Positions 405 to 22,160 of a DNA stretch of 34,372 nucleotides are shown here, piece after piece. Location of the stretch: contig NW_021831707.1 in NCBI RefSeq assembly GCF_006345805.1, positions 1 to 34,372 of the forward strand, given 5' to 3'. Every line of letters starts with the position of its first letter. The stretch's first letter is position 1. Under the pieces are notes generated by a model that saw only the letters and a list, made by a program, of their open reading frames with translations, did no database searches and had not been told where the DNA came from. Made by a program: the position numbers and the translations under genes. This DNA is from Octopus sinensis. Lineage: Eukaryota.

Positions 405-950
405 GTATTACATAATTTGTGTTGGCAATTAAGAATAAAGTAGCTTCGTTCATTAAAACAGTTGCTGCATTGCATAACAGATAAGACTTCTGCGATGCAG
501 AGATCGCATTGTTGGCGTGAGTAATAAAAGTCCACTTTAAACTGTATACAGCTGAATTATGTTTTAGGTAATGAATGAGACTAGATATAAATATAGTATT
601 AGTTTACACTTGAGATTTAAAGCCAGAATAATGGTTACTAATTCTGGCTTTGAAGGTAGTGCTGCTCGAGGTGATATATGCATTCTTGGAATCTTCCGTA
701 GTGGCCATATACTTATGTACCATATTTCTCGTGAGGCATTTGTTTTGCAAGGGAGAGGAGTTTACAGTTACATAGTCTTCTAGGGGGTACTAAGTGGAGT
801 TTTTGGGTTATAATTACCTGAAATTAACCGGGCGTTATATTTAGTATTAGCCTCAGCGTTAGGATTGGTATTGTTTGTGGTGCAGTGGGAGTAGTCCGGG
901 GGATGGAGATTATCAATGAGCACTCTCAATTTGCGCATCTATTACACATA
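405..950 (-). mobile_element. Decayed Penelope-like element (PLE) fragment, GIY-YIG endonuclease region, copy A
   Basis: Minus-strand translation across stops and frameshifts gives CNCK..PLQNKCLTRNMV..ATTEDSKNAYI..STTFKARISNH..LKW..THA..CDLCIAE..NERS..CQHKL, the typical PLE endonuclease end. Homologous to 16945-17520. Confidence 0.8.
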
Positions 951-1099
951 AACATACAATGAACTACTTACAATGTAAGTTCCTAGTTTCAGCAGGAATG
1001 CCTCAAAAAAAAAAAAAAGTTTCCGAGATAACAGAATGTGTAACGAAATGTGTACAATGGAAAATGAAACGTCAATAAAACAAAATTATGCAGAATACA

Positions 1100-1130
1100 T
1101 TTAATTTTAAAGACTGAACTTTCTTTTAAT
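1100..1130 (-). terminator. Candidate polyadenylation signals (two ATTAAA) of CCP gene copy 1
   Basis: tttaat at 1100-1105 and 1125-1130 reads ATTAAA on the minus strand, ~220-245 nt after the stop. Both are conserved in copy 2 (~17667-17700). No transcript evidence. Confidence 0.4.
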
Positions 1131-1346
1131 TATAGAATTGTTTCCAGTTAGTTATGCAAATACCAAGAGAGAAAACACCCTAAGAAAGTTCTTGGAAATA
1201 AATTTAGGAATGTTTCTAATTACATCGTCATAGCTATGCAGATAAGATGTGGAATATGCTTCTTTAAATTTAACTCATATACACAGAAACAATAATTTGT
1301 GCATAAAGGGGACAGTTTCAAAGGGAGAGTAGTTTGATATTAGTAA

Positions 1347-2834
1347 TTATCGGTAATTTTCACACCTCAAAGTACAACAACTTGCATGGGTTTCCTTAAA
1401 AGGTATTTCCGATGTTGTAGTGTTAAAATTCACAACGACACACTTATGTCGGTAATTACAGTTTCTATAGTCACAAGTGTACTGGCGGTAACCAAAAAAT
1501 TTGCAATCAATGTTTGTTCCGCAAACATAGTAATCTGATGAAATATTCTTGTAAAGAAGATTGTTGTTACGATCAAGTCGAATATTTTTAAATGCACAGC
1601 CTGGTGTTGGGGTCAGTATACCTTTATGGCACATTACGCTCTCGTTCAATTTCTTCGAATTTGGGAATTCACAAGAATAAGTAATGTTCGTATTTTCTGG
1701 AACTGTACTGCCATACGGAAGATATTTCAAAGTTTTCGAATTTCGGTAGCTATATATGCCAAATTTTCGCAACAATTGACAGTTCTTTGCACACTGTGGA
1801 AGTTTTCCACTCCATGTTCCATTTTCTAAACAGGTTCTTTTTGAATCTCCCAACAATGTTTCTCCAACTGGACAACTATATTCAATAACCGAAAAATTAC
1901 GTGACAAAATAAAATTTAACCCATTTCGTTTCTCAATTTTACACGCGTTTCTGCACTGTATATCTGGATACCATTTACTTGACAAGCATTGAACGACACC
2001 AAACGCGACAGGAATGAAAGATCGTTTGCAAGAATATATGACTTTTCCTCCATCGTTGATTAAGGTTCTTGGTTTTAATATTGTACCTTCAGAAATAGTC
2101 ACCACTCTACCAGCAATTTCAGGTACAAAGCAATTCAAAGTACAAACAGGTGCCGGAAAGTTCCAGCTGCCGTCTGAAAGACAAGTTAATACAGATTCAC
2201 CTTTCAGACTATATGGCTTTAAGCAACTGAAATGAATTGTTTCGTTAACTTTAACTTCATTTGTATTGTTTACATTGCCATGTTTGGGTGGGTTCGGTGG
2301 GAGACATTTAACAATTTCACAGATTGGTGGGAGAGACGACCACTGTTTATTTTCTTGACAACGTATTGAATTGTTTCCTCGTAAAAAATAACCAGACAGG
2401 CAGGAAAAACGAATAACAGAGTTATATGAGTATGCAACATTTATCATGAAACTGCGTGCATGTTTATGAAAAATCGGGCAAGTTATTAACTTACATTTTT
2501 TATCTTCATACATCCATTTACCATTCGAACAAATAATATCGGCTGTATTCTCTACGCTTGCTTCAAAATAGCGGTTGCACTTTTGTTTCAGATGTATTTT
2601 TGCCTCTTCCCATTTCACAATATAATGTATCCGACTGTTCTTTAATGTCGGTAAAGGACCACAGTTTAGGATATTTATAATTTGTTCAAAAAACCACGGA
2701 GCATAGTTGTTTTCGGTTGAAGTCGAATTACTGTATTCAGATACGATCTTTTTCATAACATTTCCAAATGTATTATTTTCACTCTTCACTGTTAATATAA
2801 TTAAGAAAAGGAAATAAAATTTTCTGGATATCAT
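1347..2834 (-). CDS. Secreted multi-Sushi/CCP glycoprotein (495 aa), single exon, copy 1; Hig/LEV-9-like modules plus Cys-rich C-terminal domain
   Basis: Uninterrupted ORF with a hydrophobic N-terminus (MISRKFYFLFLIILTVKS). About six CCP modules (C58-C114 divergent, C119-C172, C177-C231, C235-C294, C298-C348, C352-C413) with F/Y-x-C and C..W..P-x-C motifs. About 10 N-glycosylation sequons, no TM segment, intact paralogue at 17917-19401. Confidence 0.93.
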   Translation of the reverse strand: MISRKFYFLFLIILTVKSENNTFGNVMKKIVSEYSNSTSTENNYAPWFFEQIINILNCGPLPTLKNSRIHYIVKWEEAKIHLKQKCNRYFEASVENTADIICSNGKWMYEDKKCKLITCPIFHKHARSFMINVAYSYNSVIRFSCLSGYFLRGNNSIRCQENKQWSSLPPICEIVKCLPPNPPKHGNVNNTNEVKVNETIHFSCLKPYSLKGESVLTCLSDGSWNFPAPVCTLNCFVPEIAGRVVTISEGTILKPRTLINDGGKVIYSCKRSFIPVAFGVVQCLSSKWYPDIQCRNACKIEKRNGLNFILSRNFSVIEYSCPVGETLLGDSKRTCLENGTWSGKLPQCAKNCQLLRKFGIYSYRNSKTLKYLPYGSTVPENTNITYSCEFPNSKKLNESVMCHKGILTPTPGCAFKNIRLDRNNNLLYKNISSDYYVCGTNIDCKFFGYRQYTCDYRNCNYRHKCVVVNFNTTTSEIPFKETHASCCTLRCENYR

Positions 2835-2927
2835 TCTCTCAATTTTGTTGCTAAACTTGTTCGTGAAGATAAGGTCGCTGTGTTCACACTTGTTATTTCG
2901 TTGCCTTCAGTGACTGTTCAATGCACC

Positions 2928-2934
2928 TTTTATA
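2928..2934 (-). promoter_or_regulatory. TATA box (TATAAAA) of CCP gene copy 1
   Basis: TTATCTCGAGTATAAAAGG, 94 nt upstream of the ATG; identical in copy 2 while the adjacent sequence has diverged. Confidence 0.65.
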
Positions 2935-3189
2935 CTCGAGATAACACACCCAGGAGCGTATAAGTAGTACTGATAAAAACTTACTTATATTTACTTTTTT
3001 GAATTTGACACCGTTTTAATTGAATGAATAAGGATACTCCCATATACACCTCTTTTAGAGAGTACAGAATATTATGTCCAGACTAAATATCAAACTGAGT
3101 ACATTGCAAGCACAAATTACAAACTATGAAAAACGATAACATTATATTAAATAAATTTTATTGTTGATACTTTGTATAATTTCATATAC

Positions 3190-3234
<45 letters not shown>

Positions 3235-3382
3235 TACTGCATAGAATGCTGTATATGTGTGTATGTATGTATGTATGTATGTATGTATGTATGTATGTAT
3301 GTATGTATGTATGTATGTATGCATGCATGTATGTATGTATGTATGCCAAATGCATGCATATGTAGATAGAAAGATAGATAGA
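3190..3382. repeat. (TA)n, (TATG)n and (GATA)n microsatellite block
   Basis: Directly visible; a homologous, longer block lies upstream of copy 2. Confidence 0.95.
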
Positions 3383-5224: not shown

Positions 5225-6425
5225 TATGAAGGTCGGTTGAAAAGTCCCCAGGCTAATCAAGATACTCTCATGGAATTTGACTAAATGAGGTTTATTTCAT
5301 TTCTTTCATCGGCGTTGTAGTGTTTGAATCTTATTATTGAAGAAGCTTTCATCCTGTGGGTCAAAAAATTATCAAGAGCAGATGTGACGTCATCGTCACT
5401 GCGATACTGTTTCCAGCCAAGTATTTTTATGATGTTGGGGACATGATAGTCAAGTGGTATCAAACCACTAGAATAGGGACGGTGATCAACCAGTTCACAG
5501 CCACTCTACTCACAGCAGCCATTGAAACCAATGACTTGTGTGCTGGGGCATTGCCCTGATAAAACAAAACCCCTTTCATCAGTTTTCATCGGCATTTAGT
5601 CTTGATTGCCTTTTGCAACTGCTTCAGATAGTTGGCATATTTCTCTCCACTGATGACGTGGCTTTTTTGAAGATAGTCAACGAACACAATGCCTTTTGCA
5701 ACCCAAAAGACTGAGGTCGTCACCTTCCCTGCAGATGAAACGACCGTGGTCCTCTTTAGAGAAGATGAGGATGGGTGTTTCCACAGCATGGATTGTTTCT
5801 TTGTCCCTGGCTCAAAGTGATGAAACCAACATTCATCCTGGCTAAGAAAACGTTCAAGGAAACCAGCTGAATCTGTCTGAAAGAGTGACAGATTTTTCTG
5901 TGATGTCGACAGCCTGGTGCGCTTTTGATCAGGTGTCAAAAGACATGGAGTCCACCGAGCAGATACCTTCGTCATGCCACATTCATTGTGTAGAATAACT
6001 CCCACGGTATACGCTTTTAGAATTGGTTATTTGATTGATAGTCAATCATATGCCATCCATCACCATGTGGTGAACATGACCAACGTTTTCTTCGGTGGTA
6101 GTAGTTGCAAGACGTAAAGACCTTGGGTGATCTTTAAAACCCTCCATTCCTCGCCTAAATTCACCTATCTGCTTTTGCACCGTTGATGAAGATGGAGCGT
6201 CATCCCTTAATATAGCAAGCATGGCAGCATGAATGTACCTGAGTGACTAAACACGTTTTCTGCTGGTACTTGATAACAGTGTTCTTTGATCTGTCAGATT
6301 TCAATTTACGTGTAAAGAAATAATGCAGATTTTAATAAGAATAACTGAAATTAATGCATGCAAGATTTCACAGTTATGGCATAGCTCATTTATAGTCAAC
6401 CTATGAGCTTTTTGCCCACTCTCTT
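5225..6425 (-). mobile_element. Decayed Tc1/mariner (DD34D-type) transposon
   Basis: ORF 5586-6005 has KVSARWTPCLL, SQDECWFHHFEP and VFW; next frame has FYQGNAPAH and RPYSSGLIPLDYH (degenerate HPPYSPDLAPSDY). Degenerate TIRs at ~5225-5258 and ~6392-6425; ~1.2 kb; contains stops and frameshifts. Confidence 0.88.
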
Positions 6426-9216: not shown

Positions 9217-9557
9217 AAGAGGTTAGACAGAAAAAAATTGTACTGACGCCTGAGTGGGAGGACAAAAAATGTTATTTATCGTGCAGCTTTGCAATAAGTT
9301 ACAAATCGACAAATTATATCATTATTTTGATGAAAATTGTTCATTGCTTGAAAAATATTAGTTAAGTCTAAAACAATTTAATATGTACTCAATGAATGAA
9401 ACTCAATAAAATCTATCTATTTGTTGGAGTCTAACAATTTATTGTGTTCTCTGAAATTTTGTTCTCTTTTTTATTAATCTTTATATTTCACCTTGCTCTA
9501 TCCACTAGTGCACTAATATGATGTTCTGTACTGGGAGTTATACTCCTTTCTATTTGA

Positions 9558-9639
<82 letters not shown>

Positions 9640-9649
9640 CACGCACACA

Positions 9650-10092
9650 TTCTTTTATTCTTTTATTTGTTTCAGTCATTTGAATGCGGCCGTACTGGAG
9701 TACCACCTTTAGTTGAACAAATCGACCCCAGGACTTATTCTTTGTAAGCCTTGTACTTATTCTATCGCTCTCTTTGCCGAACTGCAAGTTACGGGGACGT
9801 AAACACACCAACATCGGTTGTCAAGCGATGGTGGGAAGACAAACATAGGCACAAACATATACACACACATACATACACACATACACACACACACACACAC
9901 GCACATACATACATACACACACATATACATACGGCAGTCTTTCAGTTTCTGTTTACCGAATCAACTCACAAGGCCTTTGTCGGCCCGAGGTTATAGCAGA
10001 AGACACTTGCCCAAAGTGCCACGCAGTGGGACTGAACCTGGAGCCATGTGGTTGGTAAGGATGTTACTTACCACACACCCACTCCTGCGCTT
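9650..10092 (-). mobile_element. tRNA-derived SINE
   Basis: Reverse complement closely matches 15335-15737 (head, gcaagtgtcttctgctata core, internal microsatellite, tail). Confidence 0.9.
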
Positions 10093-10237
10093 GTATATAC
10101 ATACAACACACACACACACACACATACACATATATATATATTCACAAACATGTATATAATATATATTCATACATACATACATACATACATACATACATAC
10201 ATACATACATAGTTGAAATTTATCGAAAAACAAAAGA

Positions 10238-11102
10238 CTAAGACAGGTGTGTATGAACAACAAGCAAGGGTATTAGTTTGACGCTCGAGAAAGAATGAAA
10301 AAGTCTTTTACGTTTCGAGCCTTTGCTTTCCAACGAAACGGAATAAGAGAAAATAAGCAGGGAGAGGGTCGAACATAGCGATGACTGGAAAAAAATGCAT
10401 TGAAAGAAAGGGATAGAGTAAAGTGCTAGTGATCCCAACAAGAGAAGGTGCACATGCATGTGTGTGTGTGAGAATGGTGTATGTGTGTTTGTGTGTGTGT
10501 TTGTGTTGTGTGTAGCAGTTGATGTGTGCCTTTTCACGTGGTGTGTGCACATGTGTATGTGTGTCTGTGACCAGTGTGCATGTATGTGGGTGAAAGTTAT
10601 CTTTGTCTGTATGTTGCGTGTGTAAATGCGTGTTGCGTGTGTATGTATGTATAGTCTGTGTTCAGGTGTTTGTTTATGTGGATGTGGGAGTGTGCATGAT
10701 GGTGTGCGTTGTGTGTGTACTGAGTTAAAGAGTGTATATGGCTTCTCGTATAGTGGAGTGTGTGGTGGCGTTATTGAATATTGTGTGTCGGTGTGTGGAT
10801 GATGGTGTGTGTTGTAGGTGCTAAGTGGTCACTGCTAATGTGTGTGGAATGGTGTAGTTTTTGTATCAAATGAAGAGAGGAGGTGAGGTGGTGTCAGATG
10901 AAGCGAGGAGGTGAGTTGAGCCTATATGATGGAAAGGAGCGAAGAGAGAAGATTAATTCTTGTTCACGGCGAAGGCGGGAGTCCAGATATCCCCCGTACA
11001 AAGACAATCCAAACACAGACAGATGCTAGAGCGAATGACCGGTTGAGCGGAAATGGCGCGTGACTGGGGAGACATTGCCGAGTTTGACCGATGTACAGGG
11101 AA
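10238..11102 (-). mobile_element. PLE 3' part (end of GIY-YIG endonuclease, 3'UTR/pLTR with degenerate hammerhead)
   Basis: Minus strand reads SLYIGQTR..PVTRHFRSTGHSL*..RLRREQELIFSLRSFPSYRLNSPPRFI*; continuous with 12663-14100 across the RTE insertion. Confidence 0.8.
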
Positions 11103-12662
11103 AAATCGATGTCCTGAAAAATCTCCGGAACAACAAGGCCCCGGGTGAGGACGGTGTCCCAACTGAGATCTACAAGGCTGAGCCTGATGTCTTCGCAGCC
11201 AGGCTTCATCGTGTCTTATGTGCTGTGTGGGCGACGGAGCGTTTTTCTTCCTGATGACTGGAGCGAGGCAACTTTTTTACCTTTCTGTAAAAAAGGTGAT
11301 AGAAAGCTGTGTTCCAACTATAGAGGCATCAGCTTGATCGATGTAGCTGCCAAAACCTTTGCAATCCTTCTTTTGAAGAGGTTCCAGGCCATACGTGATG
11401 TCCGTACTCGTCCTTCACAGGGCGGCTTCCGTCCCGGGAGAGGGTGCGTTGATCAAATATTCAGTCTCCGGCGAGTCCTGGAACAGCGGTGGGTGCACCA
11501 ACAACCTACCGTTCTCTGCTTCATCGATTTTGCGGCTGCCTTCGACTCGGTGGATCGGGAGGCCCTCTGGCGTATTATGCAGGCGGACGGTATCCATGTG
11601 AAGCTGCTAAACCTCGTACAGGGCTACCATCGTTCAACGAGGGCTCGTGTGAGGGTCTATGTTGGGGAGACGGAGTCGTTTGATGTCACTACCAGTGTTC
11701 GATAGGGTTGTGCGCTCTCGCCAACCCTATTCAATTACGCCATCTCAACACTGCGCTTCGGGACTACCCGGGTGTAGAGGCTAGGAGAGGAGTCGTGGTA
11801 ACGGACCTGGCCTACACAGATGACATCGCGCTCTTGGGCTCTAACCGGGCGGATGTCCAAGATGCTCTCAAAAGGGTGCATGTGGCAGCGGCAGCTGTTG
11901 GTCTTCGGATCAATGCTGGCAAAACCAAAGTGATGACGTCTCTGGTCGCAGCAGATGAATGGCAGCCAATCGTTCTCCAGGGCGTGGAGCTGGAGGATGT
12001 GGAGTCCTTTGTCTACTTGGGTTCAACGGTGGTTTCAAAGAGCCAGGGCGCAGCCGAGGTCGAGCGTCGCATAGGTGCTGCCAGATTCGCATTCGTGCGC
12101 CTCCAGCGGTGCCTGTGGGACAGAAGAGAGATCTCCTCGGTAATCAAATGGCGAATCTATCAGGCCGTCGTTCGTACTATCCTCCTCTATGGTTGTGAAA
12201 CATGACCTATGAGGGTAGTTGATCATCGAAGGCGTTCGACAATGACTGTCTCTGCTGCATTCTTCGCTGCCGACGCATTGAACGGGTTCCTACAGCCGGT
12301 CTTCGCCATCGCCCCTCCCTTCGGTGCTTTTACAATGGCGCTTAAGAGGGTTCGGTCATGCGGCCCGTGTCCAGAGGGTGAGCTGATTCGCGATGTCCTC
12401 CTCCTACCTCCACTTCCCAGCTGGCGCAAACGTACGGGCGGGTAGCTGAAGATCTGGGAAACGACGATAAAGGAAGACCTCTCTGAACTCTCCGGTCTGC
12501 AGGTGGTGGGTCTGCGCAGATGGAGCTGCGAATGGCTTGCTATCTCCAGTGACCTTGCACAGGACCGTCGAGCGTGGGCCGCCATGGTTCGTGATGCCGT
12601 TAGGACCAGAGAAGAAGCCGGCTCAAACCGCCCTGGGTGAACGCCGTCACAAGTACAAGTTA
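11103..12662 (+). mobile_element. 5'-truncated RTE-clade LINE (RT fragment) nested in a PLE, 10-bp TSD gtacagggaa
   Basis: NNKAPGEDG, NYRGISL, QGGFRPGRGCVDQIF, FIDFAAAFDSV, LAYTDDIALL, LLYGCET motifs, with stops and frameshifts. Tail caagtacaagt. TSD at 11093-11102 and 12663-12672. Confidence 0.92.
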
Positions 12663-14100
12663 GTACAGGGAAGAACAGAAAGAGCGAGATACAGTAAATG
12701 ACATGACTAGAAGCGCAGATAAAGGAGTCGGTGATGTGATAGGGACGATGATAGGTGCCTGTGAGGATGGTGGTGTTGCAGAAGTAGGGGTAGGCTGGAC
12801 AGCGTGGGTGGGTGCAGTGGAACGAGCCAGGCTGCGAAGTGGGGGTTGGGAAGAAACTGTAGACCAGGATGGTGGTGTTGCAGAGGTAGGGGCAGGCTGG
12901 ATGTCACTCAGGATATGGGCTCGTTCGAAAGAGGGAAGAAGATTCGGGAAGATGTGCGAGGTGTAGGTGTCCGACAGGAGTCGCCAGAAGGCTCGTAGAA
13001 TGATGCATTGGAGGTGCAGGGCGGAAAGGTGGTAGGTGAGGGGAAACGGAAGACGAGCAACGGCGGGGCAGGTGTGAGGCGAAAGAGCTGAGGCACGGTC
13101 CACAGATCGTGCCCTGAAAAGGTCAGTGTGGATAGTGGTCAGGGGATATCCACTTAGGACGAAGTGGCGAGCCATGCGTTGAGACTGAGTCTCAAAGTCA
13201 TGGTTGTCACTGCAGAGCCTGCGCAGACAGGGGAATTAGGAGTAGGGGATGGAGAACTTGGTGTGGGTAGGGTGGGAGGAGGAGAAGTTAAGGTAGGAGT
13301 GTGAGTCAGTGTGTTTATAGTGGATTGAGGTAGTGAGATCGGAGTGGTATATGCTGAGAGAAATGTCGAGAAATTCGATTGAAGAGTTAGAGATAGTGCA
13401 GGGGAATTGGAGGTTAGGATGGAAGGATTGGACAAAAGAGAGGAAGGAACCTAGTTGTTCGCGCCGATACTGGTCATCATGTGAGGTCGCTCCGATACAG
13501 TCATCGCTATAACGACCGTAGTATTCGGGAGCGGGACCAGTGAATTGTGAGAATATTTGGGCCTCAACGTAGCCAACGAAGAGGTTCGCATACTTGGGGT
13601 CCATTCTTGCTCCCATGACCCATCTCGAGACCTGTTGGTAAAAATCCCCCGCGAATGAGAAGCAGTTGAGGGAGAGGAGAAGATCAGTCAGACGAAGAAG
13701 TGTGGAGGTGTCAGGTTGAGAGTCAGGTCGAAGATCTAGAAAGGGTCTGAGCGCAAGAAGTCCTTCGTTGTGCGGGATCACCGTATATAAACTCTTGATA
13801 TCAAGAGTAAATAGAAATTTAAAGGGGCTAGAAGGGAAGGAGAAAGAGTTAAAGAGACAGATAGCATGGCTGGTGTCGTGCACCTGGGAGAGGAGGGAAG
13901 TCACTAGGAGGACAAAGACACAGTTGAGGTATTTGGAGATCATTTCTATGGAGCAGTTGCAGGTGGAGACGATGGGGTGGCCAGAGTTGTTGGGCTTGTG
14001 AATGTTGCGAAGGAAGTAAATAGTGGGAGTGCACGGAATACGGACAATGAGGTTAGATGTGGTGGGAGGGAGACGGGAGGAGGAAATGTGGTCATGAATA
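12663..14100 (-). mobile_element. PLE 5'-truncated body: RT and start of GIY-YIG
   Basis: ORF 13236-14141 has NIHKPNNSGHPIVS, TLDIKSLYTVIP, FSFAGDFYQQ..MG..P.YANLF and RYSDD (degenerate RYIDD). Downstream frames give DSFICASSHVIYCIS..SLY. Confidence 0.9.
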
Positions 14101-14415
14101 GTATATACAAACAACATAAGCGAACCCATATACTCACACAATCACACACAATAACTTTACAGACGGCCGCAACAATATCAACAGCATGACTAACTACTTA
14201 GTGCATATAAGTAGTCTCTATCATTATATATAGTTTAGACTTTAATTTCCTTTATATTTAACATTCACTATTAATATCCCTACTCTTTCTGTTAGCTACT
14301 TATGACGTTATATCATATAACGTTTTTTTAAAACAATATTAATAGCGTTCTGTCTATCGCTATACGAATCCATCATTTTTTGCTAAAATGTCGTATTGAC
14401 AAGTTTCGTTTTTTC

Positions 14416-14502
14416 ACTTTCCTGAAGAGAAGATTGCATTGTTTATACCTTTTATTCTTTTGAATAAGTATCAGTGGAATTTTTGAAACATATGTAGAAA
14501 GT
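14416..14502 (+). ncRNA. Type I hammerhead ribozyme motif (PLE-type)
   Basis: Stem I ACTTTC/GAAAGT; core CTGAAGA (14422-14428); wobble-rich stem II GAAGA/TTTTT; GAAA (14485-14488); palindromic stem III ACATATGT; GTA cleavage triplet (14494-14496). Confidence 0.7.
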
Positions 14503-14708
14503 AAAAATACTTGTTTAAACCTGCGTTAACTCCATTTTTTATTCATATTATTCAAATATTCAACGTAAATACGAAGTTTCAACCTTTATAAACAAGGAGT
14601 TACAACATCTTTACTTGTGGGATTTTGCTGCCCTGGTAACTATTCATTCATTTATCCGTGTTAATTGTTAACAAGGTAAAATACACTCATCTATTTATAT
14701 ATATATAT

Positions 14709-15043
14709 AGGTGCAGGAGTGGGTGTGTGTTAAGTAGCTTGCTAACCAACCACATGGTTATGGGTTCAGTCCCACTGCGTGGCATCTTGTGAGTGGATTT
14801 GGTAGACGGAAACTGAAAGAAGCCTGTCGTATATATGTATATATATATGTGTGTGTATGTGTTTGTGTGTCTATCTTTGCTTGACAACCGATGCTGGTGT
14901 GTTTACGTCCCCGTCACTTAGCAAAAGAGACCGATAGAATAAGTACTGGGCTTACAAAGAATAAGTCCCGGGGTCGATTTACTCGACTAAAGGCGGTGCT
15001 CCAGCATGGCCGCAGTCAAATGACTGAAACAAGTAAAAGAGTA
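14709..15043 (+). mobile_element. tRNA-derived SINE with internal deletion
   Basis: Matches 15335-15737 but lacks the segment between two cttg motifs (ggcatcttg|tgagtgg). Confidence 0.9.
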
Positions 15044-15334
15044 TATATATATATATATACATACATATATTCGCACACAAATTCGGAGAGTGGAGCCGAT
15101 AAAGTCTAGGCTACAAATGTCTTTTAGCTTGCAGATCTGATGTAATCATTTCTCAAAGAGGGGTATTCAGCTCGCTACTCAGCAGACCGAAGATACCTTA
15201 ATTATAAGAAAATTACATTGTCGTTAAGTAATCCCAACTTATCTCTCCGAAAATATAATTTGAAATGAGAGGTGAAGCCGGAAGAACAGAGTAATCCACC
15301 CACAAACCAAAAAAAAAAAAAAAAATCCAGATAT

Positions 15335-15737
15335 AGGCTCGGGATTGGCTGTGTGGTAAGTTGCTTGGTAACCAACCACATGGTTCCGGGTTCAGTCCCA
15401 CTGCGTGGCATCTTGGGCAAGTGTCTTCTGCTATAGCCTCGGGCCGACCAATGCCTTGTGAGTGGATTTGGCAGACGGAAACTGAAAGAAGCCTGTCGTA
15501 TATATGTATATATATGTATGTATGTGTGTTTGTGTGTCTGTGTTTGCATGACAACCGATGCTGGTGTGTTTACGTCCCTGTCACTTAGCGGTTCGGCAAA
15601 AAGAGACCGATAGAATAAGTACTGGGCTTACAAAAACAATAAGTCCCGGGGTCGAGTTGCTCGACTAAAGGCGGTGCTCCAGCATGGCCGCAGTTAAATG
15701 ACTGAAACAAGTAAAAGAGTAAAAAGAGTAAAGAGTA
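15335..15737 (+). mobile_element. Full-length tRNA-derived SINE (abundant octopus-type family)
   Basis: A box TGGCTGTGTGG (15346-15356), B-box-like GGTTCAGTCCC (15389-15399), internal (TA/TG) microsatellite, (AAAGAGT)n tail; three other near-complete copies in the window. Confidence 0.9.
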
Positions 15738-16944
15738 TAAAACAGGAAGAAATGTTTGAAGAAATAAGAGGGCTAGTAAGTAAGAAAAGTGAAGGAAGAG
15801 GTTAAAAATTTGTGAGTGGGGAATTGTCGAAAGTTGTTAGAGAAGAAAGATAATGAGAGGCGAGCGGAGAGGTGGGGTGATTTAGTGTAGATTTAGTGTA
15901 GACGGATGCTGACTTTAGTGAAACACTTAAACCCTTTATAAATCCTATCATCTGACCATGATCAACCGTAACATAAAAAATTAAATTATACAACCCTCCT
16001 TTAAATACCATCATTACAACTTAGAACAACAAATATAACCTATATATATATAGAAATGTATAATATAATCTCACTAATCAAATTAATAAATGGAGGAGCT
16101 CCCATATAACAAATACATAATAAAAATATTAATAAACTCATTATAAGATTATAATTAATTATCCCTCCACATAAAAATAATCTTCGACTATTAATTTTTT
16201 TCATAAAACTTATATAAACTTAGATGTGTTTCGACCAATGATTGGTCCAGGCCATGTCTAACTTAATAGCACCACCTGATGGTGCTATTAATTACATTTC
16301 CTAAACAAAATAAACCTGAAGAACATAACCCATAACAAACCGTCATCAAAATAGCCCCTTCTCAACCAATAATAAATCCCCTAGTTAGTAGGGGTAATTA
16401 GGGGTAATTTGAGAATATTAAGCTAAGGCCACTTTACTGTGTCTCCAGTAAATAGATACTTTGGCGCACCCACGCGTAAACGTTTGTGCACAAACATTTT
16501 TTAGAAGAGATGAAATGGTCAAGAATAAGAAAAAAAGGAAAGGAAGAAGTCAAAGAATTAAGAGTGGGTATTGAATGGAGTTGTTAGGAAAGGGTGGAAA
16601 AAGAGGGAGATAAGAGTTGAAGGCTGTATTCTTTAAAGGGGAGCATAGTTCACGTGGTTAAAGTTGATCGCTTACTACTTCAGGCATATGCACACCCGCA
16701 CGCTTATGCGTACACTCACAGAGTGCCCATAGGATCAGCTTTGGTAAACATGCGCGCGTACGCGCATGCTTATTACCACATGTATAAAGGAAGCTATAAA
16801 GATCTAACAATGTTAAGGAAATGTATGAAAATAGCTTTAAAAAGTATATGTTATAAATACTTTGAAGAAATTCAAGTGACGCTGATGTAGGAGGATTGGT
16901 AGGGAATTATAGGGGAAGGAAGAATTATTTGTAACTTCAGAAGG

Positions 16945-17520
16945 TATTACATAATTTGTGTCGGCCATTCAGGATAAAGTAGCTTCGTTCATTGAAACAG
17001 TTGTTGCATTGCATAACAGATAAGACTTCTGCGATGCAGAGATCGCATTTGTTGCTATAACCGTTTTACGGTTTGGCATGAGTAACAATGGATCATATTA
17101 AACTGTATACAACTGCATTAATTTTTAAGTTATGACTGAGCCTAGATAAAGAGGTAGTATTAGTTTTCGCTTGAAATTTAAAGCCAGAATAATAGTTACT
17201 AATTCTGGCCTTGAAGGTGGTGGTACTAGTTCTGATATATACTTACTTGGAATCATCCGTGGTGACCACATACATTTGTACTGCATTTCTTGTGAGGCAT
17301 TTGATTTTTAAGGAACAGGAGATGGAGCATTTACAGCTGCAATGACTTCTAGAGGATAGTAAAGTGGGGTTTGTGGGGTTATGATTATCTGAGTTTAACC
17401 AGGAGTAATATTTAGTATTAGCCTCAGCGTTAGGGTTGGTATTGTTTGTAGTGCAGTGGAAGCAGTCCGAGGGGGGGGGATATTATCAGTGAGCACTGTC
17501 AATTTGTGCATCTATTACAC
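16945..17520 (-). mobile_element. Decayed PLE GIY-YIG fragment, copy B
   Basis: KCLTRNAV..TTDDSK*VYI..TTFKARISN..THAKP*NGYSNKCDLCIAE..NERS..RHKL; same position relative to the CCP gene as copy A. Confidence 0.8.
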
Positions 17521-17916
17521 ATGAACACGTTGTGAACTACTTACTAAATAAGTTCTTAGTTTCAGGAATGTCTCCCGAAAAAACACTTGTCGAGATAATA
17601 GAATGTGTAAAAAAATGTGCGTAATGGAAAAAGAAACGTTAATAGAAGCAAAATCAAAGAGAATACATTTAATTTTAAAGACTGAACTTTCTTTTAATTA
17701 TAGAATTGTTTCCAGTTAGTTATGCAAATACCAAGAGAGAAAACACCCTAAGAAAGTTCTTGGAAATAAATTTAGGAATGTTTCTATTACATCGTCATAG
17801 CTATGCAGATAAGATGTGGAATATGCTTCTTTAAATTTAACTCATATACACAGAAACAATAATTTGTGCTTAAAGGGGACAGTTTCAAAGGGAGAGTAGT
17901 TTGATATTAGTAATTA

Positions 17917-19401
17917 TCAGTAATTATTACACCTCAAAGTACAACATCTTGCATGGGTTTCCTTAAAATGTATTTCCGATGTTGTAGTGTTAAAATTCAC
18001 AACGACATGCTTACGTCGGTAATTATAGTTTGTATAGTCACAAGTGTACTGGCGGTAACCAAAAAATTTGCAATCAATGTTTGTGCTGCAAACATAGAAA
18101 TCTGATGAAATATTCTTGTAAAGAAGATAGTAGTTACGATCAAGTCGAATATTTTTAAATGCACAGCGTGGTGTTGGGGTTAGTATACCTTTATGGCACA
18201 TTACGCTCTCGTTCAATTTCTTCGAATTAGGGAATTCACAAGAATAAGTAATGTTCGTATTTTCTGGAACTGTACTGCCATACGGAAGATATTTCAAAGT
18301 TTTCGAATTTCGGTAGCTATATATGCCAAATTTTCGCAACAATTGACAGTTCTTTGCACACTGTGGAAGTTTTCCACTCCATGTTCCATTTTCTAAACAG
18401 GTTCTTTTTGAATCTCCCAACAATGTTTCTCCAACTGGACAACTATATTCAATAACCGAAAAATTACGTGACAAAATAAAATTTAACCCATTTCGTTTCT
18501 CAATTTTACACGCGTTTCTGCACTGTATATCTGGATACCATTTACTTGACAAGCATTGAACGACACCAAACGCGATAGGAATGAAGGATCGTTTGCAAGA
18601 ATATATGACTTTTCCTCCTTCGTTGATTAAGGTTCTTGGTTTTAATATTGTACCTTCAGAAATAGTCACCACTCTGCCAGCAATTTCAGGTACAAAGCAA
18701 TTCAAAGTACAAACAGGTGCTGGAAAGTTCCAGCTACTGTCTTGAAGACAAGTTAATACAGATTCACCTTTCAGACTATAAGGTTTCGAGCAACTGAAAT
18801 GAATTGTTTCGTTAATTTCAACTTCATTTGTATTGTTTATACGGCCATGTTTTGGTGGGTTCGGTGGGAGACATTTAATAGTTTCACAAACTGGGGGTGG
18901 AGACGACCACTGTTTATTTTCTTGACAACGTATTGAATTGCTTCCTCGTAAAAAATAATCAGACAGGCAGGAAAAGTGAACAACCGAATTATATGTGTAT
19001 GCAACATTTATCATGAAACTGTTTGCAGGTTTATGAAAAATGGGACAGGTTATCAACTTACATTTTTTATCTTCATACATCCATTTATCATTCCAACAAA
19101 TAATATCGGCTGTATTCTCTACGCTTGCTTCAAAATAGCGGTTGCACTTTTGTTGCAGGTGTATTTTTTCCTCTTCCCATTTCAAAGTATATTGTATTCG
19201 ACTGTTATTCAATTTCGGTAAAGGACCACAGTTTAAGAGTTTTATCATTTGTTCAGAAAACCACGGAGCATAGTTATTCTTGGTTGAAGTCGAATTACTG
19301 TAATCAGATACGATCTTTTTCATAACATTTCCAAATGTATTATTTTCACTCTTCACTGTTAATATAATTAAGAAAAGGAAATAAAATGTTCTGGATATCA
19401 T
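17917..19401 (-). CDS. Secreted multi-Sushi/CCP glycoprotein (494 aa), single exon, copy 2
   Basis: Gap-free alignment to copy 1 with 48 amino-acid differences by manual count, one residue shorter (CGA>TGA). All CCP cysteines conserved. Confidence 0.93.
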   Translation of the reverse strand: MISRTFYFLFLIILTVKSENNTFGNVMKKIVSDYSNSTSTKNNYAPWFSEQMIKLLNCGPLPKLNNSRIQYTLKWEEEKIHLQQKCNRYFEASVENTADIICWNDKWMYEDKKCKLITCPIFHKPANSFMINVAYTYNSVVHFSCLSDYFLRGSNSIRCQENKQWSSPPPVCETIKCLPPNPPKHGRINNTNEVEINETIHFSCSKPYSLKGESVLTCLQDSSWNFPAPVCTLNCFVPEIAGRVVTISEGTILKPRTLINEGGKVIYSCKRSFIPIAFGVVQCLSSKWYPDIQCRNACKIEKRNGLNFILSRNFSVIEYSCPVGETLLGDSKRTCLENGTWSGKLPQCAKNCQLLRKFGIYSYRNSKTLKYLPYGSTVPENTNITYSCEFPNSKKLNESVMCHKGILTPTPRCAFKNIRLDRNYYLLYKNISSDFYVCSTNIDCKFFGYRQYTCDYTNYNYRRKHVVVNFNTTTSEIHFKETHARCCTLRCNNY

Positions 19402-19496
19402 TCTCTCAATTTTGTTGCTAAACCTGTTCGTGAAAATAAGTTCACTGTGTTCACACCTGTGAGTTCGTTATGCTTTTTGTGCATACTCAGTGAGCC

Positions 19497-19503
19497 TTTT
19501 ATA
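19497..19503 (-). promoter_or_regulatory. TATA box (TATAAAA) of CCP gene copy 2
   Basis: Same TTATCTCGAGTATAAAAGG context, 96 nt upstream of the ATG. Confidence 0.65.
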
Positions 19504-19759
19504 CTCGAGATAACACAGGTTCCCAGCTACGTATAAGTGGTTCCGAGAAAAACATATTTATATTTTCAGTTTGAATTTGACACCTTTTTGATTGAGAAAA
19601 TAGAGATACACCAACTCTTTTAGAATTTATAGAAATTTATTATGTCCAGACTAAATATCAAACTGTGTACACTATAAGCACAAATTACAAACTATGAAAA
19701 ACGATAACATTATATTAAATAATTTGTATAGTTGATATTTTGTATAATTTCATATACAT

Positions 19760-20432
19760 AATATATATATATACAGTACTGCATAGAATGCTGTATATGT
19801 GTGTATGTATGTATGTATGTATGTATGTATGTATGTATGTATGTATGTATGTATGTATGTATGTATGTATGTATGTGTGTATGTATGTATGTATGTATGT
19901 ATGTATGTATGTATGTATGTATGTATGCATGCATGCATGCATGTATGTATGTATGTATGTATGTATGTATGTATGTATGTATGTATGTATGTATGTGTGC
20001 ATGTACGTACATACTATGTACGTATGTATGTGTGTTGTGTGTGTTGTGTGTGTGTGAGAGAGTTTGTATGTGCGTATGTAAGTATATATGCATGTATGCA
20101 TGTATGTATATGTAAACAGAAAGAAAATTGATAGATAGATAGATATACATAGATATACAAAGAATACTGTATATGTATGCATGCATGTATGTAAGTATGT
20201 ATGTATATATGTATGTATGTATTCCCGTACGCACGTATGTATGTATGTATGTATGTATGTATGTATGTATGTATGTATGTATGTATGTATGTATGTATAT
20301 GTATGTATGTATGCACGCACGTACGTTCGTACGAATGTACGTACGTATGTATGTATGTATGTATGTATGTATGTATGTATGTATGTATGTATGTATGTAT
20401 TTATGTGTATGTATGTATGTATGTAGGTATGT
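19760..20432. repeat. Expanded (TATG)n compound microsatellite
   Basis: Directly visible, ~670 bp; source of HTYI/MYVC pseudo-ORFs. Confidence 0.95.
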
Positions 20433-20439
20433 AGATATA

Positions 20440-22160
20440 CGCATACTAAAGGAACTAATCGAAAAATATTTGCAGCCTATCTGGAATAAAATTAAGTACG
20501 TGACTAGAAGGAAAAGATATGGCACCGTGGAAGCAAGGTTCGAGTGGGAAGACGAAGCCAAACTACACACCACAGTGCTCATATAAATGGACAACTAGTA
20601 CTCCTGTCGACTACCCCGGACAGCGAGTTTTAAAAAGATTGGAGAGGTACCCCACGAGATTGGCGATCGTCATACTTGATAAATGAGGAAAACATCGATG
20701 TACTACAGAGAAATAAACTATACCAACAAAACTGGTGTGTTCAGGGTCTGGAGCTTTTATTTGAGACAAATGAACAGACACTTGAAAGTATTCCAGGCAC
20801 AATCCATTTGCCTGAAAGAGCAAAATTGCACGCAACGGTGGAGGGGCGCAAACCGAGGTGCTATCTCAGTGGGCAGAGGGACTACTTCAAAGTCCCTTGC
20901 CCACTGAGAACAAACGAGAAACGCACCCCACCTCGAGCAAAAGAGACTCCACAACAGCACTTACAACAACAAACGCAGGCTGCTCCAAAAGTAACTCCAC
21001 CACCAACACCACCCAAAGCAGCAACGACTGCTGCACAGTGTACAGAGAAAACATCAACAGTCACAAGAACGGCAACGAAGATCACCACAGATGCAGCAAC
21101 AGTAGGATTAGCAGCAGCACCATCCACATTGGAAGGGACGCCATCTGTAGCAGCAGTCAAGAATACCCGAAAAGCATCACTAAGAAACTACAGAACCGAC
21201 ACCAGCAGCACGAAAGGAAGAAACCACTTCGACAAACAACCCACCTGTTATACCCCTTTCTAAGTCTGACCCAGAAACTGCCATAGAAGCAAGCAATGAG
21301 TGGAGAGAATTCCCCGAAAGGGAAAAACGCATAAAGGATACCATCCCAGCACTTCCCTACAACACAGACACACGACCACCAACTAAAACATCCACATTAC
21401 CAACACCACCAATACCACTGCCAGCACACCGTACAAAACCACCGTCACAATCACTAGTAAATCTCACTGCAATCAACCCAAATAACGAATCCCTAATGAA
21501 ACACATACATGAAAATACAAACATCACATCAAAAGATTTTCTGTGCACTTCACCTAACGCTTCACCTCACGCACAAATAGCCAGTGTATCTAACACAACC
21601 GTCATCTTAAAAGAAAACCACTCCAATGCGGCGGTTAAGCCCCAAGGAACAATAATGAAAAGTCTATAGAAAAACCTGGTCGTGTAAATTTTCACAGCCA
21701 CTCAGAAAAGTGAGAAAAATCTCTCACCCCAACCCCGCAGCCCCAAAAGTAATTAGCGTATCATTCTTTTAGTTTTGCTCAAGTCACGCTGCTTAAATGT
21801 GCATGGCTTGGGGTCGTTTTGAAAGCAAGGGCGCTTTCTCAACGACCTTAGTTCACTGGATTTGGATTGCAAAAAAGTGTAAAAGTTGTATGAATGGTTT
21901 GAACGAGTGGGCTTAACTTGGGTTTAAACTTCTAGGCTTCTGCCTTAGCAGTAAGGTTGTCATGTGGTTTGTGGGGTTTCCACGACCAATCTAGAATACT
22001 CCCCCTTTTGGGCACCACTGTTGTTTTATATATTTACACTTGCAATTTTTAGCTGTTTATCATTGTTAAAACTGTTTGCACGATTTTGTGTACGACCTCA
22101 CCTTGTCTGTCCAGTATTGTCCCTCTGTGTCGGCCCCTAATGGCTAATAAAGAATTAAAT
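20440..22160 (+). mobile_element. Tx1/L1-clade element A: 5'-truncated ORF1, ORF2 stub and 3'UTR (ORF2 almost absent)
   Basis: ORF1 remnants KELIEKYLQPIW..KRYGTV, QNWCVQGLELL and a degenerate zinc knuckle RCYLSGQRDYFKVPC. APE start CLNVHGLG..LNDLSSLDLD at ~21790-21868 runs directly into sequence resembling the ORF2 end and 3'UTR of element B. AATAAA at ~22146. Confidence 0.7.

What the first reader, a model, noticed from the sequence alone, without database searches (positions are those of the whole stretch)
1347..1601. C-terminal Cys-rich domain differs only by amino-acid-changing codons, between near-identical tracts
From codon 412 to the stop I count 16 nucleotide differences from copy 2 (17914-18168). 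They give 12 amino-acid changes plus one R>stop, with no purely synonymous codon. Upstream, 346 bp are identical (1663-2008 = 18230-18575). Downstream, ~250 bp of 3'UTR differ by one substitution and one 1-bp indel. A divergent island of replacement changes between homogenised tracts suggests diversifying selection on a binding or effector module.
Basis: partly seen in the sequence, partly recalled or inferred. Interest (0 to 1): 0.75.

Follow-up and report, generated by a model that had tools for sequence, protein, structure and literature searches.

The report
Fast-evolving tail of duplicated octopus gene
Two neighbouring copies of an octopus-only secreted protein gene keep being copied onto each other, yet their cysteine-rich tail differs only by amino-acid-changing mutations, a pattern that, together with the same signal in relatives, points to selection for diversity in a so far uncharacterised binding-type module.

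Summary
The window is a whole unplaced contig of the Octopus sinensis assembly. It carries two direct-repeat, single-exon genes, 495 and 494 aa. Each encodes a signal peptide, six four-Cys Sushi/CCP modules and an 8-Cys C-terminal domain found only in octopods.

- **The island:** codons 412-495 differ at 16 nucleotides in 13 codons, none purely synonymous.
- **The flanks:** the 407 coding bases upstream differ at 2 synonymous sites, and the 255 bases downstream by one substitution and one indel.
- **Outside that tract:** the copies are 7-20% diverged.

Non-allelic gene conversion explains the near-identical tracts. A second collinear contig shows different tract borders.

On its own, "no synonymous change" is only marginal (p about 0.02-0.08; pairwise LRT p = 0.008). 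The island's clustering against its flanks is strong (p = 1e-6). Its synonymous sites are as young as the flanks.

A site-model test across nine family sequences finds omega > 1 only in this domain (LRT 11.6, p = 0.003). The signal holds without the window copies (p = 6e-4).

Diversifying selection is therefore the best reading, at about 0.6. The function is untested. The phenomenon is well known; the gene family and its domain are undescribed.

The parts
1347..2834 (-). Copy 1: single-exon ORF of 495 aa plus stop. It encodes a signal-peptide-like N-terminus, six four-Cys Sushi/CCP modules (Cys 58-413) and an 8-Cys C-terminal domain.
   Evidence: ORF. Pfam Sushi 108.6 bits, three stretches. 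Cys map and absence of a TM-like segment. AF2/Foldseek match strings of CCP modules such as beta2-glycoprotein I, factor H and CD46.
17917..19401 (-). Copy 2: single-exon ORF of 494 aa plus stop, 90% identical in protein to copy 1. Its C-terminal domain has 6 Cys, having lost the family-conserved C459 and C465.
1347..1601 (-). The island in copy 1: codons 412-495 plus stop, the C-terminal Cys-rich domain. It carries 16 nucleotide differences from copy 2, all in replacement codons.
17914..18168 (-). The island in copy 2 (stop codon at 17917-17919).
1602..2008 (-). Near-identical coding tract, codons 277-411 (= 18169-18575). It has 2 synonymous differences, and 1663-2008 is identical over 346 bp.
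   Evidence: Permutation test.
1092..1346 (-). Near-identical 3' flank, the presumed 3'UTR (= 17660-17913). It has one substitution (1303) and one 1-bp indel (1218). ATTAAA signals lie at 1130 and 1105, and the tract ends within about 15 bp of the second.
2009..2834 (-). Older-diverged 5' part of the CDS, codons 1-276 (= 18576-19401). dS 0.157, dN 0.062, omega about 0.4.
405..3345 (.). Duplicated segment A, matching 16944-19911 at 89% identity overall. The repeat is direct with spacing of about 16.57 kb.
16944..19911 (.). Duplicated segment B.
1303..1361 (-). Patch covering codons 492 and 495 and 3'UTR site 1303. Here the collinear contig's copy-1 homologue carries the copy-2 states, marking a short polymorphic conversion tract at the island's 3' edge.
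2009..2052 (-). Patch covering codons 261, 272 and 276. Here too the collinear contig's copy-1 homologue carries the copy-2 states, so the 5' border of the homogenised tract differs between the contigs.

Best explanation
The two genes are tandem paralogues of an octopod-restricted, secreted protein family. Each has six Sushi/CCP modules followed by an orphan Cys-rich C-terminal domain of about 80 residues.

The 5' halves keep the divergence of the original duplication, with dS about 0.16, similar to the O. sinensis / O. bimaculoides orthologue distance. The 3' half and 3'UTR (about 1092-2008/2052) have been homogenised recently by non-allelic gene conversion, which is still going on in short tracts.

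Inside that young tract, the C-terminal domain has gained about 15 replacement changes and no silent ones, on both copies. Positive, diversifying selection acts on the exposed positions of a conserved disulfide framework, and conversions that would erase these differences are not retained.

The CCP string is inferred to act as a conserved stalk. The C-terminal domain is inferred to be the variable recognition or effector head.

Shown: the duplication, the mosaic divergence, conversion-like tracts, omega > 1 in the domain in this pair and across the family, and restriction of the domain to octopods. Inferred: secretion, the stalk/head division of labour, and any ligand.
For: **Mosaic divergence and conversion**
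- Along the duplicated segment, divergence is 15-20% in outer flanks, 7-8% in the 5' CDS, 0.5% in 1602-2008 and 0.8% in 1092-1346.
- The 346-bp identical run was reached in 0 of 5000 permutations.
- dS is 0.157 in the N-terminal part against 0.024 in the middle and 0.010 in the island.
- A second collinear O. sinensis contig, about 98.5% identical, carries copy-2 states in two short patches of its copy-1 homologue, at 2009-2052 and 1303-1361.

**The island is young but replacement-rich**
- Counts are Nd 14.5 and Sd 0.5.
- If the island were as old as the 5' half, 6.9 silent differences would be expected; P(<=1) = 0.005.
- Against the pooled neutral sites of the tract (388 sites, 3-5 changes), Fisher p runs from 2e-5 to 2e-3.
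- The pairwise ML codon model gives LRT 7.1 against omega = 1, p = 0.008.

**Family-wide signal**
- In the C-terminal region, P2/P4 of O. bimaculoides have omega 2.5, and P2 or P4 against O. sinensis 3b have omega 1.3-1.5. Other regions give 0.2-0.6 in nearly all the other comparisons (the P2/P4 N-terminal region is 1.05).
- M1a against M2a on 9 sequences gives LRT 11.6, p = 0.003, with 41% of sites at omega 2.9 in the C region.
- The same test gives LRT 0.9 and 0.8 in the middle and N-terminal regions.
- It is robust to taxon and gap choices, and without the window copies gives LRT 14.8.
- Forty-seven simulations under M1a gave a maximum LRT of 3.2.
- Sites 435, 439, 457, 463 and 485, which differ between the copies, have posterior 0.87-0.95.

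**Framework conserved, surface variable**
- Cys, FFGYR and CCxLxC are invariant from Octopus to Argonauta, yet mean pairwise identity is 0.44 against 0.72-0.82 elsewhere.
- Changes polarise to both copies.
- Both ORFs stay open, although about half of random 15-hit sets create a stop.
Against: - Taken alone, the absence of silent codons in 13 differing codons is only nominally significant, at 0.02-0.08, and 0.12-0.31 if one silent step is allowed. It was also found by scanning, so a look-elsewhere discount applies.
- Codon-position counts of 7/6/3 are not far from uniform.
- Eight of the 16 changes lie in four close pairs (codons 424/425, 439, 465 and 492). If these are multinucleotide events, single-step codon models overstate omega.
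- Copy 2 lost two Cys that are invariant elsewhere. The second contig's copy has C438S and two frameshifts. Both could indicate decay rather than adaptation.
- The site models are my own implementation, with branch lengths fixed from M0. The tree is long (6.3 substitutions per codon), the alignment has indels, and recombination among paralogues can inflate M2a.
- The copy-2 states at 12 sites rest on one contig of a long-read assembly.
- There are no expression, ligand or structural data.
Confidence: 0.62

Rival explanations
1. Mosaic conversion without positive selection. The island simply escaped the most recent conversion events. It is somewhat older than its flanks and drifts under very weak constraint (omega about 1). 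The lack of silent differences is chance.
For: - Count-based tests on the island alone give p = 0.02-0.2.
- With 0-1 silent changes at about 49 silent sites, the upper limit on island dS is about 0.06-0.10, which overlaps dN 0.076.
- M0 omega for the domain family-wide is 0.75, not different from 1.
- Conversion tracts here are short and patchy.
Against: - The pairwise LRT rejects omega = 1 (p = 0.008).
- An average omega near 1 in a domain where about a quarter of sites are invariant from Octopus to Argonauta implies omega > 1 at the rest. M2a finds exactly this.
- The same excess appears in independent pairs.
Confidence: 0.2
2. Decay of the module. The C-terminal domain of copy 2, and of the second contig's copy, is losing function, and the replacement changes are unconstrained damage.
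For: - Copy 2 lost C459 and C465, which are invariant in all other members.
- The second contig's copy has C438S, Y149C and two 1-bp deletions.
- That copy differs from copy 1 by 13 replacement codons against 1 silent, at the same 1% as non-coding DNA.
Against: - Derived changes lie on both copies: at nucleotide level 7 in copy 2, 4 in copy 1 and 4 unresolved; the stop-codon site, not scored in that count, adds one more in copy 1.
- Copy 2 lost an even number of Cys, as expected for removal of one disulfide.
- Both window ORFs are intact, whereas about 50% of random 15-hit sets give a stop.
- Silent sites did not change as decay would predict.
- The rest of copy 2 is under constraint (omega 0.4 and 0).
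Confidence: 0.07
3. Ectopic donor. The island of one copy was overwritten from a third, unsampled paralogue, so the differences were imported rather than evolved in place.
For: The family is multi-copy with mosaic histories. dS between the window copies and the chromosomal paralogues rises from 0.2 (5') to about 1 (3'). Conversion is active.
Against: An imported tract should bring silent differences too, and there are none. The copy-2-specific states (425T, 435T, 439C, 459A, 465CA, 485A) match no known member. No closer relative exists in the protein collections searched.
Confidence: 0.05
4. Assembly artefact. The island differences are consensus errors, or a chimera of collapsed paralogues or haplotypes, in an unplaced long-read contig.
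For: The window is an unplaced 34-kb contig. The sister contig has 1-bp deletions typical of long-read consensus. The copy-2 island states were not seen elsewhere.
Against: All 16 differences are substitutions, clustered in 255 bp between clean flanks. Twelve copy-1 states and three copy-2 states recur in an independent contig. Random errors would not avoid silent positions or stops.
Confidence: 0.04

Closest known systems
Islands of divergence between tandem paralogues under interlocus gene conversion. Theory from Teshima and Innan (my recollection); the Arabidopsis halleri HMA4 'mosaic divergence' model is bioRxiv 10.1101/2025.10.29.685298.
   Same: These are tandem copies in which conversion-homogenised tracts alternate with diverged segments. 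Effective conversion varies along the gene, and selection on one segment opposes homogenisation.
   Different: In those models the protected island also keeps linked silent differences. Here the island has none, so its differences look newer than the last homogenisation rather than merely protected. The gene family is also different and uncharacterised.
Venom and secreted-peptide gene families with a conserved prepro or UTR and a hypervariable Cys-framework mature region. Examples are cone-snail conotoxin superfamilies and 'accelerated evolution' of snake PLA2 and three-finger toxin genes. From established literature; not tested here.
   Same: Untranslated and scaffold parts are more alike than the Cys-rich functional part. 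Replacement changes exceed silent ones, and Cys codons are largely fixed while inter-Cys loops vary. These are also multi-copy tandem families.
   Different: There is no evidence that this family is expressed in the venom gland or is toxic. The variable part is a C-terminal domain on a large six-CCP protein, not a small processed peptide. One copy has lost a Cys pair.
Vertebrate CCP-string plasma proteins: complement factor H and the CFHR cluster, and beta2-glycoprotein I.
   Same: Each is a string of Sushi/CCP modules whose C-terminal end carries the target-recognition function. Beta2-glycoprotein I, with its aberrant last domain, is the top Foldseek match. The CFH/CFHR genes are tandem and exchange sequence by conversion (established knowledge).
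   Different: Identity is only 14-25%, and over CCP modules only. The C-terminal domain here is not a CCP by Pfam and has no PDB or Pfam relative. Complement-related activity is untested, and the NCBI names (factor H-like, P-selectin-like) are automatic.
Cephalopod cephalotoxin SE-CTX and the DECA-CTX proteins (bioRxiv 10.64898/2026.04.09.716377 and 10.64898/2026.06.01.729309).
   Same: These are secreted cephalopod proteins that contain Sushi modules among Cys-rich binding domains, and they show lineage-specific diversification.
   Different: The architecture differs: about 1050 aa with EGF, TSP1 and LDLa domains, none of which is found here. They are described for decapodiforms, and no homology to the C-terminal domain was detected.

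Membership tests
Sushi/CCP/SCR-domain proteins (Pfam PF00084) | A match to the Sushi profile above the curated threshold. | tested here: met
   Copy 1 scores 108.6 bits and copy 2 scores 94.4 bits, against a cut-off of 20.7, with three stretches each.
Sushi/CCP/SCR-domain proteins (Pfam PF00084) | Repeated modules of about 60 residues, each with four Cys, and a beta-sandwich fold. | tested here: met
   Twenty-four Cys fall in six groups of four between residues 58 and 413. The AF2 model is beta-rich, although module 4 (234-296) is of low confidence. Foldseek gives E = 1e-16 to beta2-glycoprotein I, factor H and CD46.
Selectins (the NCBI name 'P-selectin-like') | An N-terminal C-type lectin domain, an EGF domain, CCPs, a transmembrane anchor and a cytoplasmic tail. 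| tested here: not met
   There is no lectin or EGF Pfam hit at E <= 1. No hydrophobic segment lies beyond the signal peptide (maximum KD19 of 1.24).
Regulators of complement activation (factor H, CD46; the NCBI name 'complement factor H-like') | Binding of C3b/C4b, with cofactor or decay-accelerating activity. | not testable with these tools
   Only the shared CCP fold was seen, and the names are automatic.
Beta2-glycoprotein I-like | Five CCPs, the last one aberrant with an extra disulfide and a lysine-rich lipid-binding loop. | tested here: inconclusive
   This is the best structural match for the whole chain. However, the C-terminal domain gives no sequence hit to any PDB chain at E <= 10. 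The stand-alone model was too poor (pLDDT 51) for a fold assignment.
Cephalotoxin (SE-CTX-type) | [quoted passage not shown] | tested here: not met
   Only Sushi is found in 495 aa. The architecture is as described.
Paralogue pair under non-allelic gene conversion | Identical or near-identical tracts longer than chance allows, with sharp borders and heterogeneous silent divergence. | tested here: met
   The 346-bp run was reached in 0 of 5000 permutations. dS is 0.157 against 0.024 and 0.010. Five differences fall in 1087-1091, then none until 1218. Patches in the second contig show different borders.
Domain under diversifying (positive) selection | dN/dS significantly above 1 at a class of sites, specific to the domain. 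| tested here: met
   The pairwise LRT gives p = 0.008. M1a against M2a gives p = 0.003 for the C region and is non-significant for the other regions. The result survives robustness checks and a null simulation with 0 of 47 replicates reaching it. Caveats: own implementation, recombination and multinucleotide changes.
Domain under diversifying (positive) selection | Population-level support, such as a McDonald-Kreitman excess or balanced polymorphism. | not testable with these tools
   Only one extra haplotype-like contig is available. It differs from copy 1 in six island codons, all replacement.
Domain under diversifying (positive) selection | Selected residues are clustered on one exposed surface. 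| not testable with these tools
High-posterior sites cluster in sequence at 431-439, 451-467 and 482-485.

The most novel reading that the evidence does not exclude
The family is an octopod invention. A conserved CCP stalk presents a new, disulfide-framed hypervariable head. The head's repertoire is generated by tandem duplication and kept diverse by selection against ongoing gene conversion. That would make it a lineage-specific recognition or effector system (immune, gamete-recognition or secretory/venom) with no counterpart described in cephalopods, built on a domain fold not yet in Pfam or the PDB.
Probability: 0.3. Interest if true: 0.7.

Novelty: new member of a known kind. Interest (0 to 1): 0.48.

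Why it matters
Cephalopod genomes are known for lineage-specific gene expansions, but few of their orphan secreted families have any functional lead. This finding singles out one such family. It is a secreted six-CCP protein with an octopod-only Cys-rich domain, and that domain is marked as the part under selection for change.

That signature is typical of molecules that meet a co-evolving partner, such as pathogens, gametes or prey targets. It therefore gives a concrete target for expression, ligand and structure work.

The pair is also a clean natural example of gene conversion and diversifying selection acting on neighbouring segments of one gene. The tract borders appear to differ between the two collinear contigs, which may be haplotypes. 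That is useful for testing models of how duplicates escape concerted evolution.

Tried and rejected
- **Fold of the C-terminal domain.** The stand-alone AF2 model reached only pLDDT 51 and Foldseek gave nothing below E = 2.6. A profile against PDB sequences and Pfam gave nothing meaningful. phmmer against 1.84 billion representatives found only octopus proteins plus one spurious repeat protein. The fold is therefore unassigned.
- **A closer outgroup or the copy-2 homologue on the sister contig.** The locus L007 stops 63 bp short of it. No protein is called there, so it could not be fetched.
- **Literature on this family.** Searches by domain, by species, by NCBI names and by accession found no paper. 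A cephalotoxin relation was rejected on architecture.
- **'Island is just an unconverted old patch'.** Rejected because its silent sites are as young as the flanks.
- **RNA genes or structured RNAs.** None were found in the window.
- **Failed runs.** A first bootstrap run timed out and one script call was empty.
Full report
**1. What the window is**

The 34,372-base window is the whole of contig VCDQ01000500.1 of assembly GCA_006345805.1. The related proteins of that assembly are labelled Octopus sinensis. The sequence is AT-rich and full of microsatellites. It also holds reverse-transcriptase and mariner-transposase remnants.

Two long ORFs lie on the minus strand: copy 1 at 1347-2834 (495 aa) and copy 2 at 17917-19401 (494 aa). 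They sit in a direct repeat of about 2.9 kb (405-3345 = 16944-19911, 89% identity overall), spaced 16.57 kb apart.

**2. Checking the observation**

- **The island.** From codon 412 to the end, 13 codons differ at 16 nucleotides, giving 12 amino-acid changes plus R495(CGA) against TGA. None of the 13 is purely synonymous.
- **Upstream.** 1663-2008 is identical to 18230-18575 over 346 bp. The whole of 1602-2008 has only two differences, both silent.
- **Downstream.** 1092-1346 differs by one substitution (1303) and one 1-bp indel (1218).
- **Further out.** Divergence jumps to 15-20% with indels, with five differences within 1087-1091. The 5' 828 bp of the CDS differ at 63 positions.

Chance is excluded for the tract structure. 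The 346-bp run was never reached in 5000 permutations. Sixteen differences in 255 bp against 4 in the 662 flanking bp gives p = 1.4e-6.

Chance is less clearly excluded for 'no silent codon'. The binomial test gives p = 0.038. When I mutated the island at random and kept only stop-free outcomes, zero silent codons arose in 2-5% of 15-hit sets and 5-8% of 12-hit sets. The 12-hit case matters because eight of the 16 changes lie in four close pairs (codons 424/425, 439, 465 and 492) and may be four events rather than eight.

**3. What the genes encode**

- Pfam finds only Sushi domains, at 108.6 and 94.4 bits.
- The 24 Cys between residues 58 and 413 fall into six groups of four, that is, six CCP-type modules. 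They follow a hydrophobic, signal-peptide-like N-terminus, and there is no transmembrane-like segment.
- A full-length AF2 model (pLDDT 68.5; C-terminal 80 residues at 64-85; module 4 poor) matches CCP strings. Beta2-glycoprotein I is the top hit, followed by factor H, CD46 and CR1/2.
- The last 80 or so residues carry eight further Cys: 438, 444, 454, 459, 465, 486, 487 and 491.
- This domain has no Pfam hit and no PDB sequence hit.
- In a phmmer scan of 1.84 billion representative proteins it found only octopus proteins. A stand-alone model was too poor to assign a fold.
- Full-length relatives exist only in O. bimaculoides, O. sinensis and Argonauta hians. All those fetched are single-exon genes of about 490 aa, several of them in clusters on one chromosome.
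- I found no paper on the family. The NCBI names (P-selectin-like, factor H-like, and so on) are automatic.

**4. Gene conversion**

Silent divergence between the copies is 0.157 in codons 1-276, 0.024 in codons 277-411 and 0.010 in the island. The first value matches the non-coding flanks and is close to the O. sinensis / O. bimaculoides orthologue distance (0.175 for P2 against 3b). The 5' half therefore keeps the age of the duplication. The 3' half plus 255 bp of 3' flank has been homogenised recently. That tract ends within about 15 bp of the second of two ATTAAA signals, the likely transcript end.

A second unplaced O. sinensis contig, VCDQ01000542.1 (locus L007), is collinear with the window at 96.7-98.6% identity. 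It lacks the retroelement-rich stretch 9406-16793. It is either the other haplotype or a very recent segmental copy.

Its copy-1 homologue agrees with copy 1 at 136 of the sites that separate the window copies. In two short patches, however, it carries the copy-2 states. These are codons 261/272/276 (2009-2052) and codons 492/495 plus 3'UTR site 1303 (1303-1361). At 1% background divergence, three or four hits in 44-59 bp are unlikely by mutation (my estimate, P about 0.01 or less). I read them as short conversion tracts whose borders differ between the two contigs. Conversion is therefore ongoing and nibbles at the island's edge.

**5. Is the island selected?**

Three lines of evidence bear on this.

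(a) *Age.* If the island had merely escaped conversion since the duplication, about 6.9 silent differences would be expected. Zero to one are seen (P <= 0.005). Its silent sites are as young as its flanks.

(b) *Rate within the tract.*
- 14.5 replacement changes fall at 200 sites, against 3-5 changes at the 388 presumably neutral sites of the same tract. Fisher p runs from 2e-5 to 2e-3.
- This assumes one history for the whole tract.
- Without that assumption, a pairwise ML codon model still rejects omega = 1 (LRT 7.1, p = 0.008). Simple counts are marginal.

(c) *The family.*
- The C-terminal region has omega 2.5 between O. bimaculoides P2 and P4 (Nd 38.8, Sd 4.2).
- It has omega 1.3-1.5 between these and O. 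sinensis 3b.
- Other regions give 0.2-0.6 in nearly all the other comparisons; the exception is the P2/P4 N-terminal region at 1.05.
- I wrote an M0/M1a/M2a likelihood program, with branch lengths fixed from M0 up to a scale factor.
- For nine sequences, the C region gives LRT 11.6 (p = 0.003), with 41% of sites at omega 2.9.
- The middle and N-terminal regions give LRT 0.9 and 0.8.
- The C-region result holds with the seven closest sequences (12.9), on ungapped columns (9.6), without the second contig (11.4), and without either window copy (14.8, p = 6e-4).
- Forty-seven data sets simulated under the fitted M1a null gave a maximum LRT of 3.2.

Five of the residues that differ between the copies (435, 439, 457, 463, 485) have posterior 0.87-0.95 for the omega > 1 class. 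The two lost Cys have about 0.

The domain combines an invariant framework (Cys, FFGYR, CCxLxC, conserved to Argonauta) with 44% mean pairwise identity, against 72-82% elsewhere. Rough polarisation with the other paralogues puts derived changes on both copies. Both ORFs are open, although about half of random 15-hit sets would introduce a stop.

**6. Caveats**

- The pair alone cannot exclude an island that is moderately older than its flanks and drifts at omega about 1.
- Paired changes and recombination can inflate codon-model tests.
- My program is not codeml.
- The tree is long and the alignment has indels.
- The copy-2 island states rest on one contig.
- Copy 2 has lost C459 and C465. This is an even number, consistent with removal of one disulfide, but I could not check that they pair with each other.
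- The second contig's copy has C438S, Y149C and two 1-bp deletions, one of them not in a homopolymer. It may be a decaying allele or may carry consensus errors. I compared it column by column and did not mend it.

**7. Mechanism proposed**

Shown:
- A tandem duplication about as old as the species split.
- Recent and continuing non-allelic conversion of the 3' half.
- A replacement-only burst in the C-terminal domain on both copies.
- Family-wide omega > 1 confined to that domain.

Inferred:
- The protein is secreted.
- The CCP string is a conserved stalk.
- The C-terminal domain is the variable recognition or effector head.
- Conversions that would erase functional differences are removed by selection.
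- The biological arena (immunity, reproduction, secretion or venom) is unknown.

**8. Comparison with what is known, and verdict**

The pattern is a textbook one: islands of divergence under interlocus conversion, and accelerated evolution of Cys-framework secreted proteins. It is a new example of a known kind.

What is new is the carrier. This is an undescribed, octopod-restricted family with an orphan domain. The case is also unusually clean, in that a replacement-only island lies inside a tract whose silent sites are almost identical.

Interest is moderate, at 0.48.

Noticed in passing
window 9406-16793 (RT ORFs 11145-11705 and 11708-12205, plus strand): This retroelement-rich stretch between the two gene copies (PF00078 hits) is missing from the otherwise collinear contig VCDQ01000542.1. 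It is either an insertion/deletion polymorphism or a difference between very recent segmental copies.
   Followed up: partly
L007 10001-11483 (contig VCDQ01000542.1): The copy-1 homologue is annotated as a 305-aa protein (XP_029656586.1). It has two 1-bp deletions, at window-equivalent positions 1936 and 1869, the second not in a homopolymer. It also has C438S and Y149C. Thirteen of its 14 codon substitutions against copy 1 are replacements. It could be a decaying allele or could carry long-read consensus errors.
   Followed up: partly
whole CDS, window copies against L002/L003 paralogues: Silent divergence between the window copies and the chromosomal paralogues rises from 5' to 3': 0.21-0.27 in codons 1-276, 0.42-0.54 in codons 277-411, and 0.8-1.0 in the C-terminal domain. 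This suggests older conversion among 5' halves across the family, or a mosaic origin. High dN may also inflate the last value.
   Followed up: no
L003 3505-4992 and 10001-11485 (O. sinensis chromosome CM016861.1): This is a second tandem pair of the family, 6.5 kb apart and 98.7% identical including flanks. The CDS has 7 differences, 4 of them replacements. It is a very recent duplication of the whole unit.
   Followed up: partly
L005 5345-6123 (minus strand; O. bimaculoides): A fragmentary family member, with pieces matching residues 7-93 and 315-494, lies 4 kb from the intact gene P0005. It is probably a pseudogene or a rearranged copy.
   Followed up: no
protein P0008 (metaclust, 376 aa): This sequence runs from the middle of one family member straight into the start (MISRTFYF...) of another. 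It could be a read-through or chimeric transcript of a tandem pair in another octopus, or a mis-called ORF.
   Followed up: no
window 3180-3350 and 19700-20450: A (TATG/TACA)n-type microsatellite lies just upstream of both copies. It is about 170 bp before copy 1 and about 700 bp before copy 2, and it marks the 5' end of the duplicated segment.
   Followed up: no
window 5586-6005 (minus strand) and 25593-25970 (plus strand): A mariner-type transposase remnant (PF01359, E = 1.6e-13) and a further reverse-transcriptase fragment (PF00078). Both are ordinary repeat debris.
   Followed up: yes
window 1105-1135: Two ATTAAA signals lie 216 and 241 nt after the stop of copy 1. The near-identical tract ends at about 1092, close to the expected cleavage site. 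The 3' border of homogenisation thus coincides with the probable transcript end. It is unexplained whether this reflects UTR constraint, RNA-mediated conversion or coincidence.
   Followed up: no
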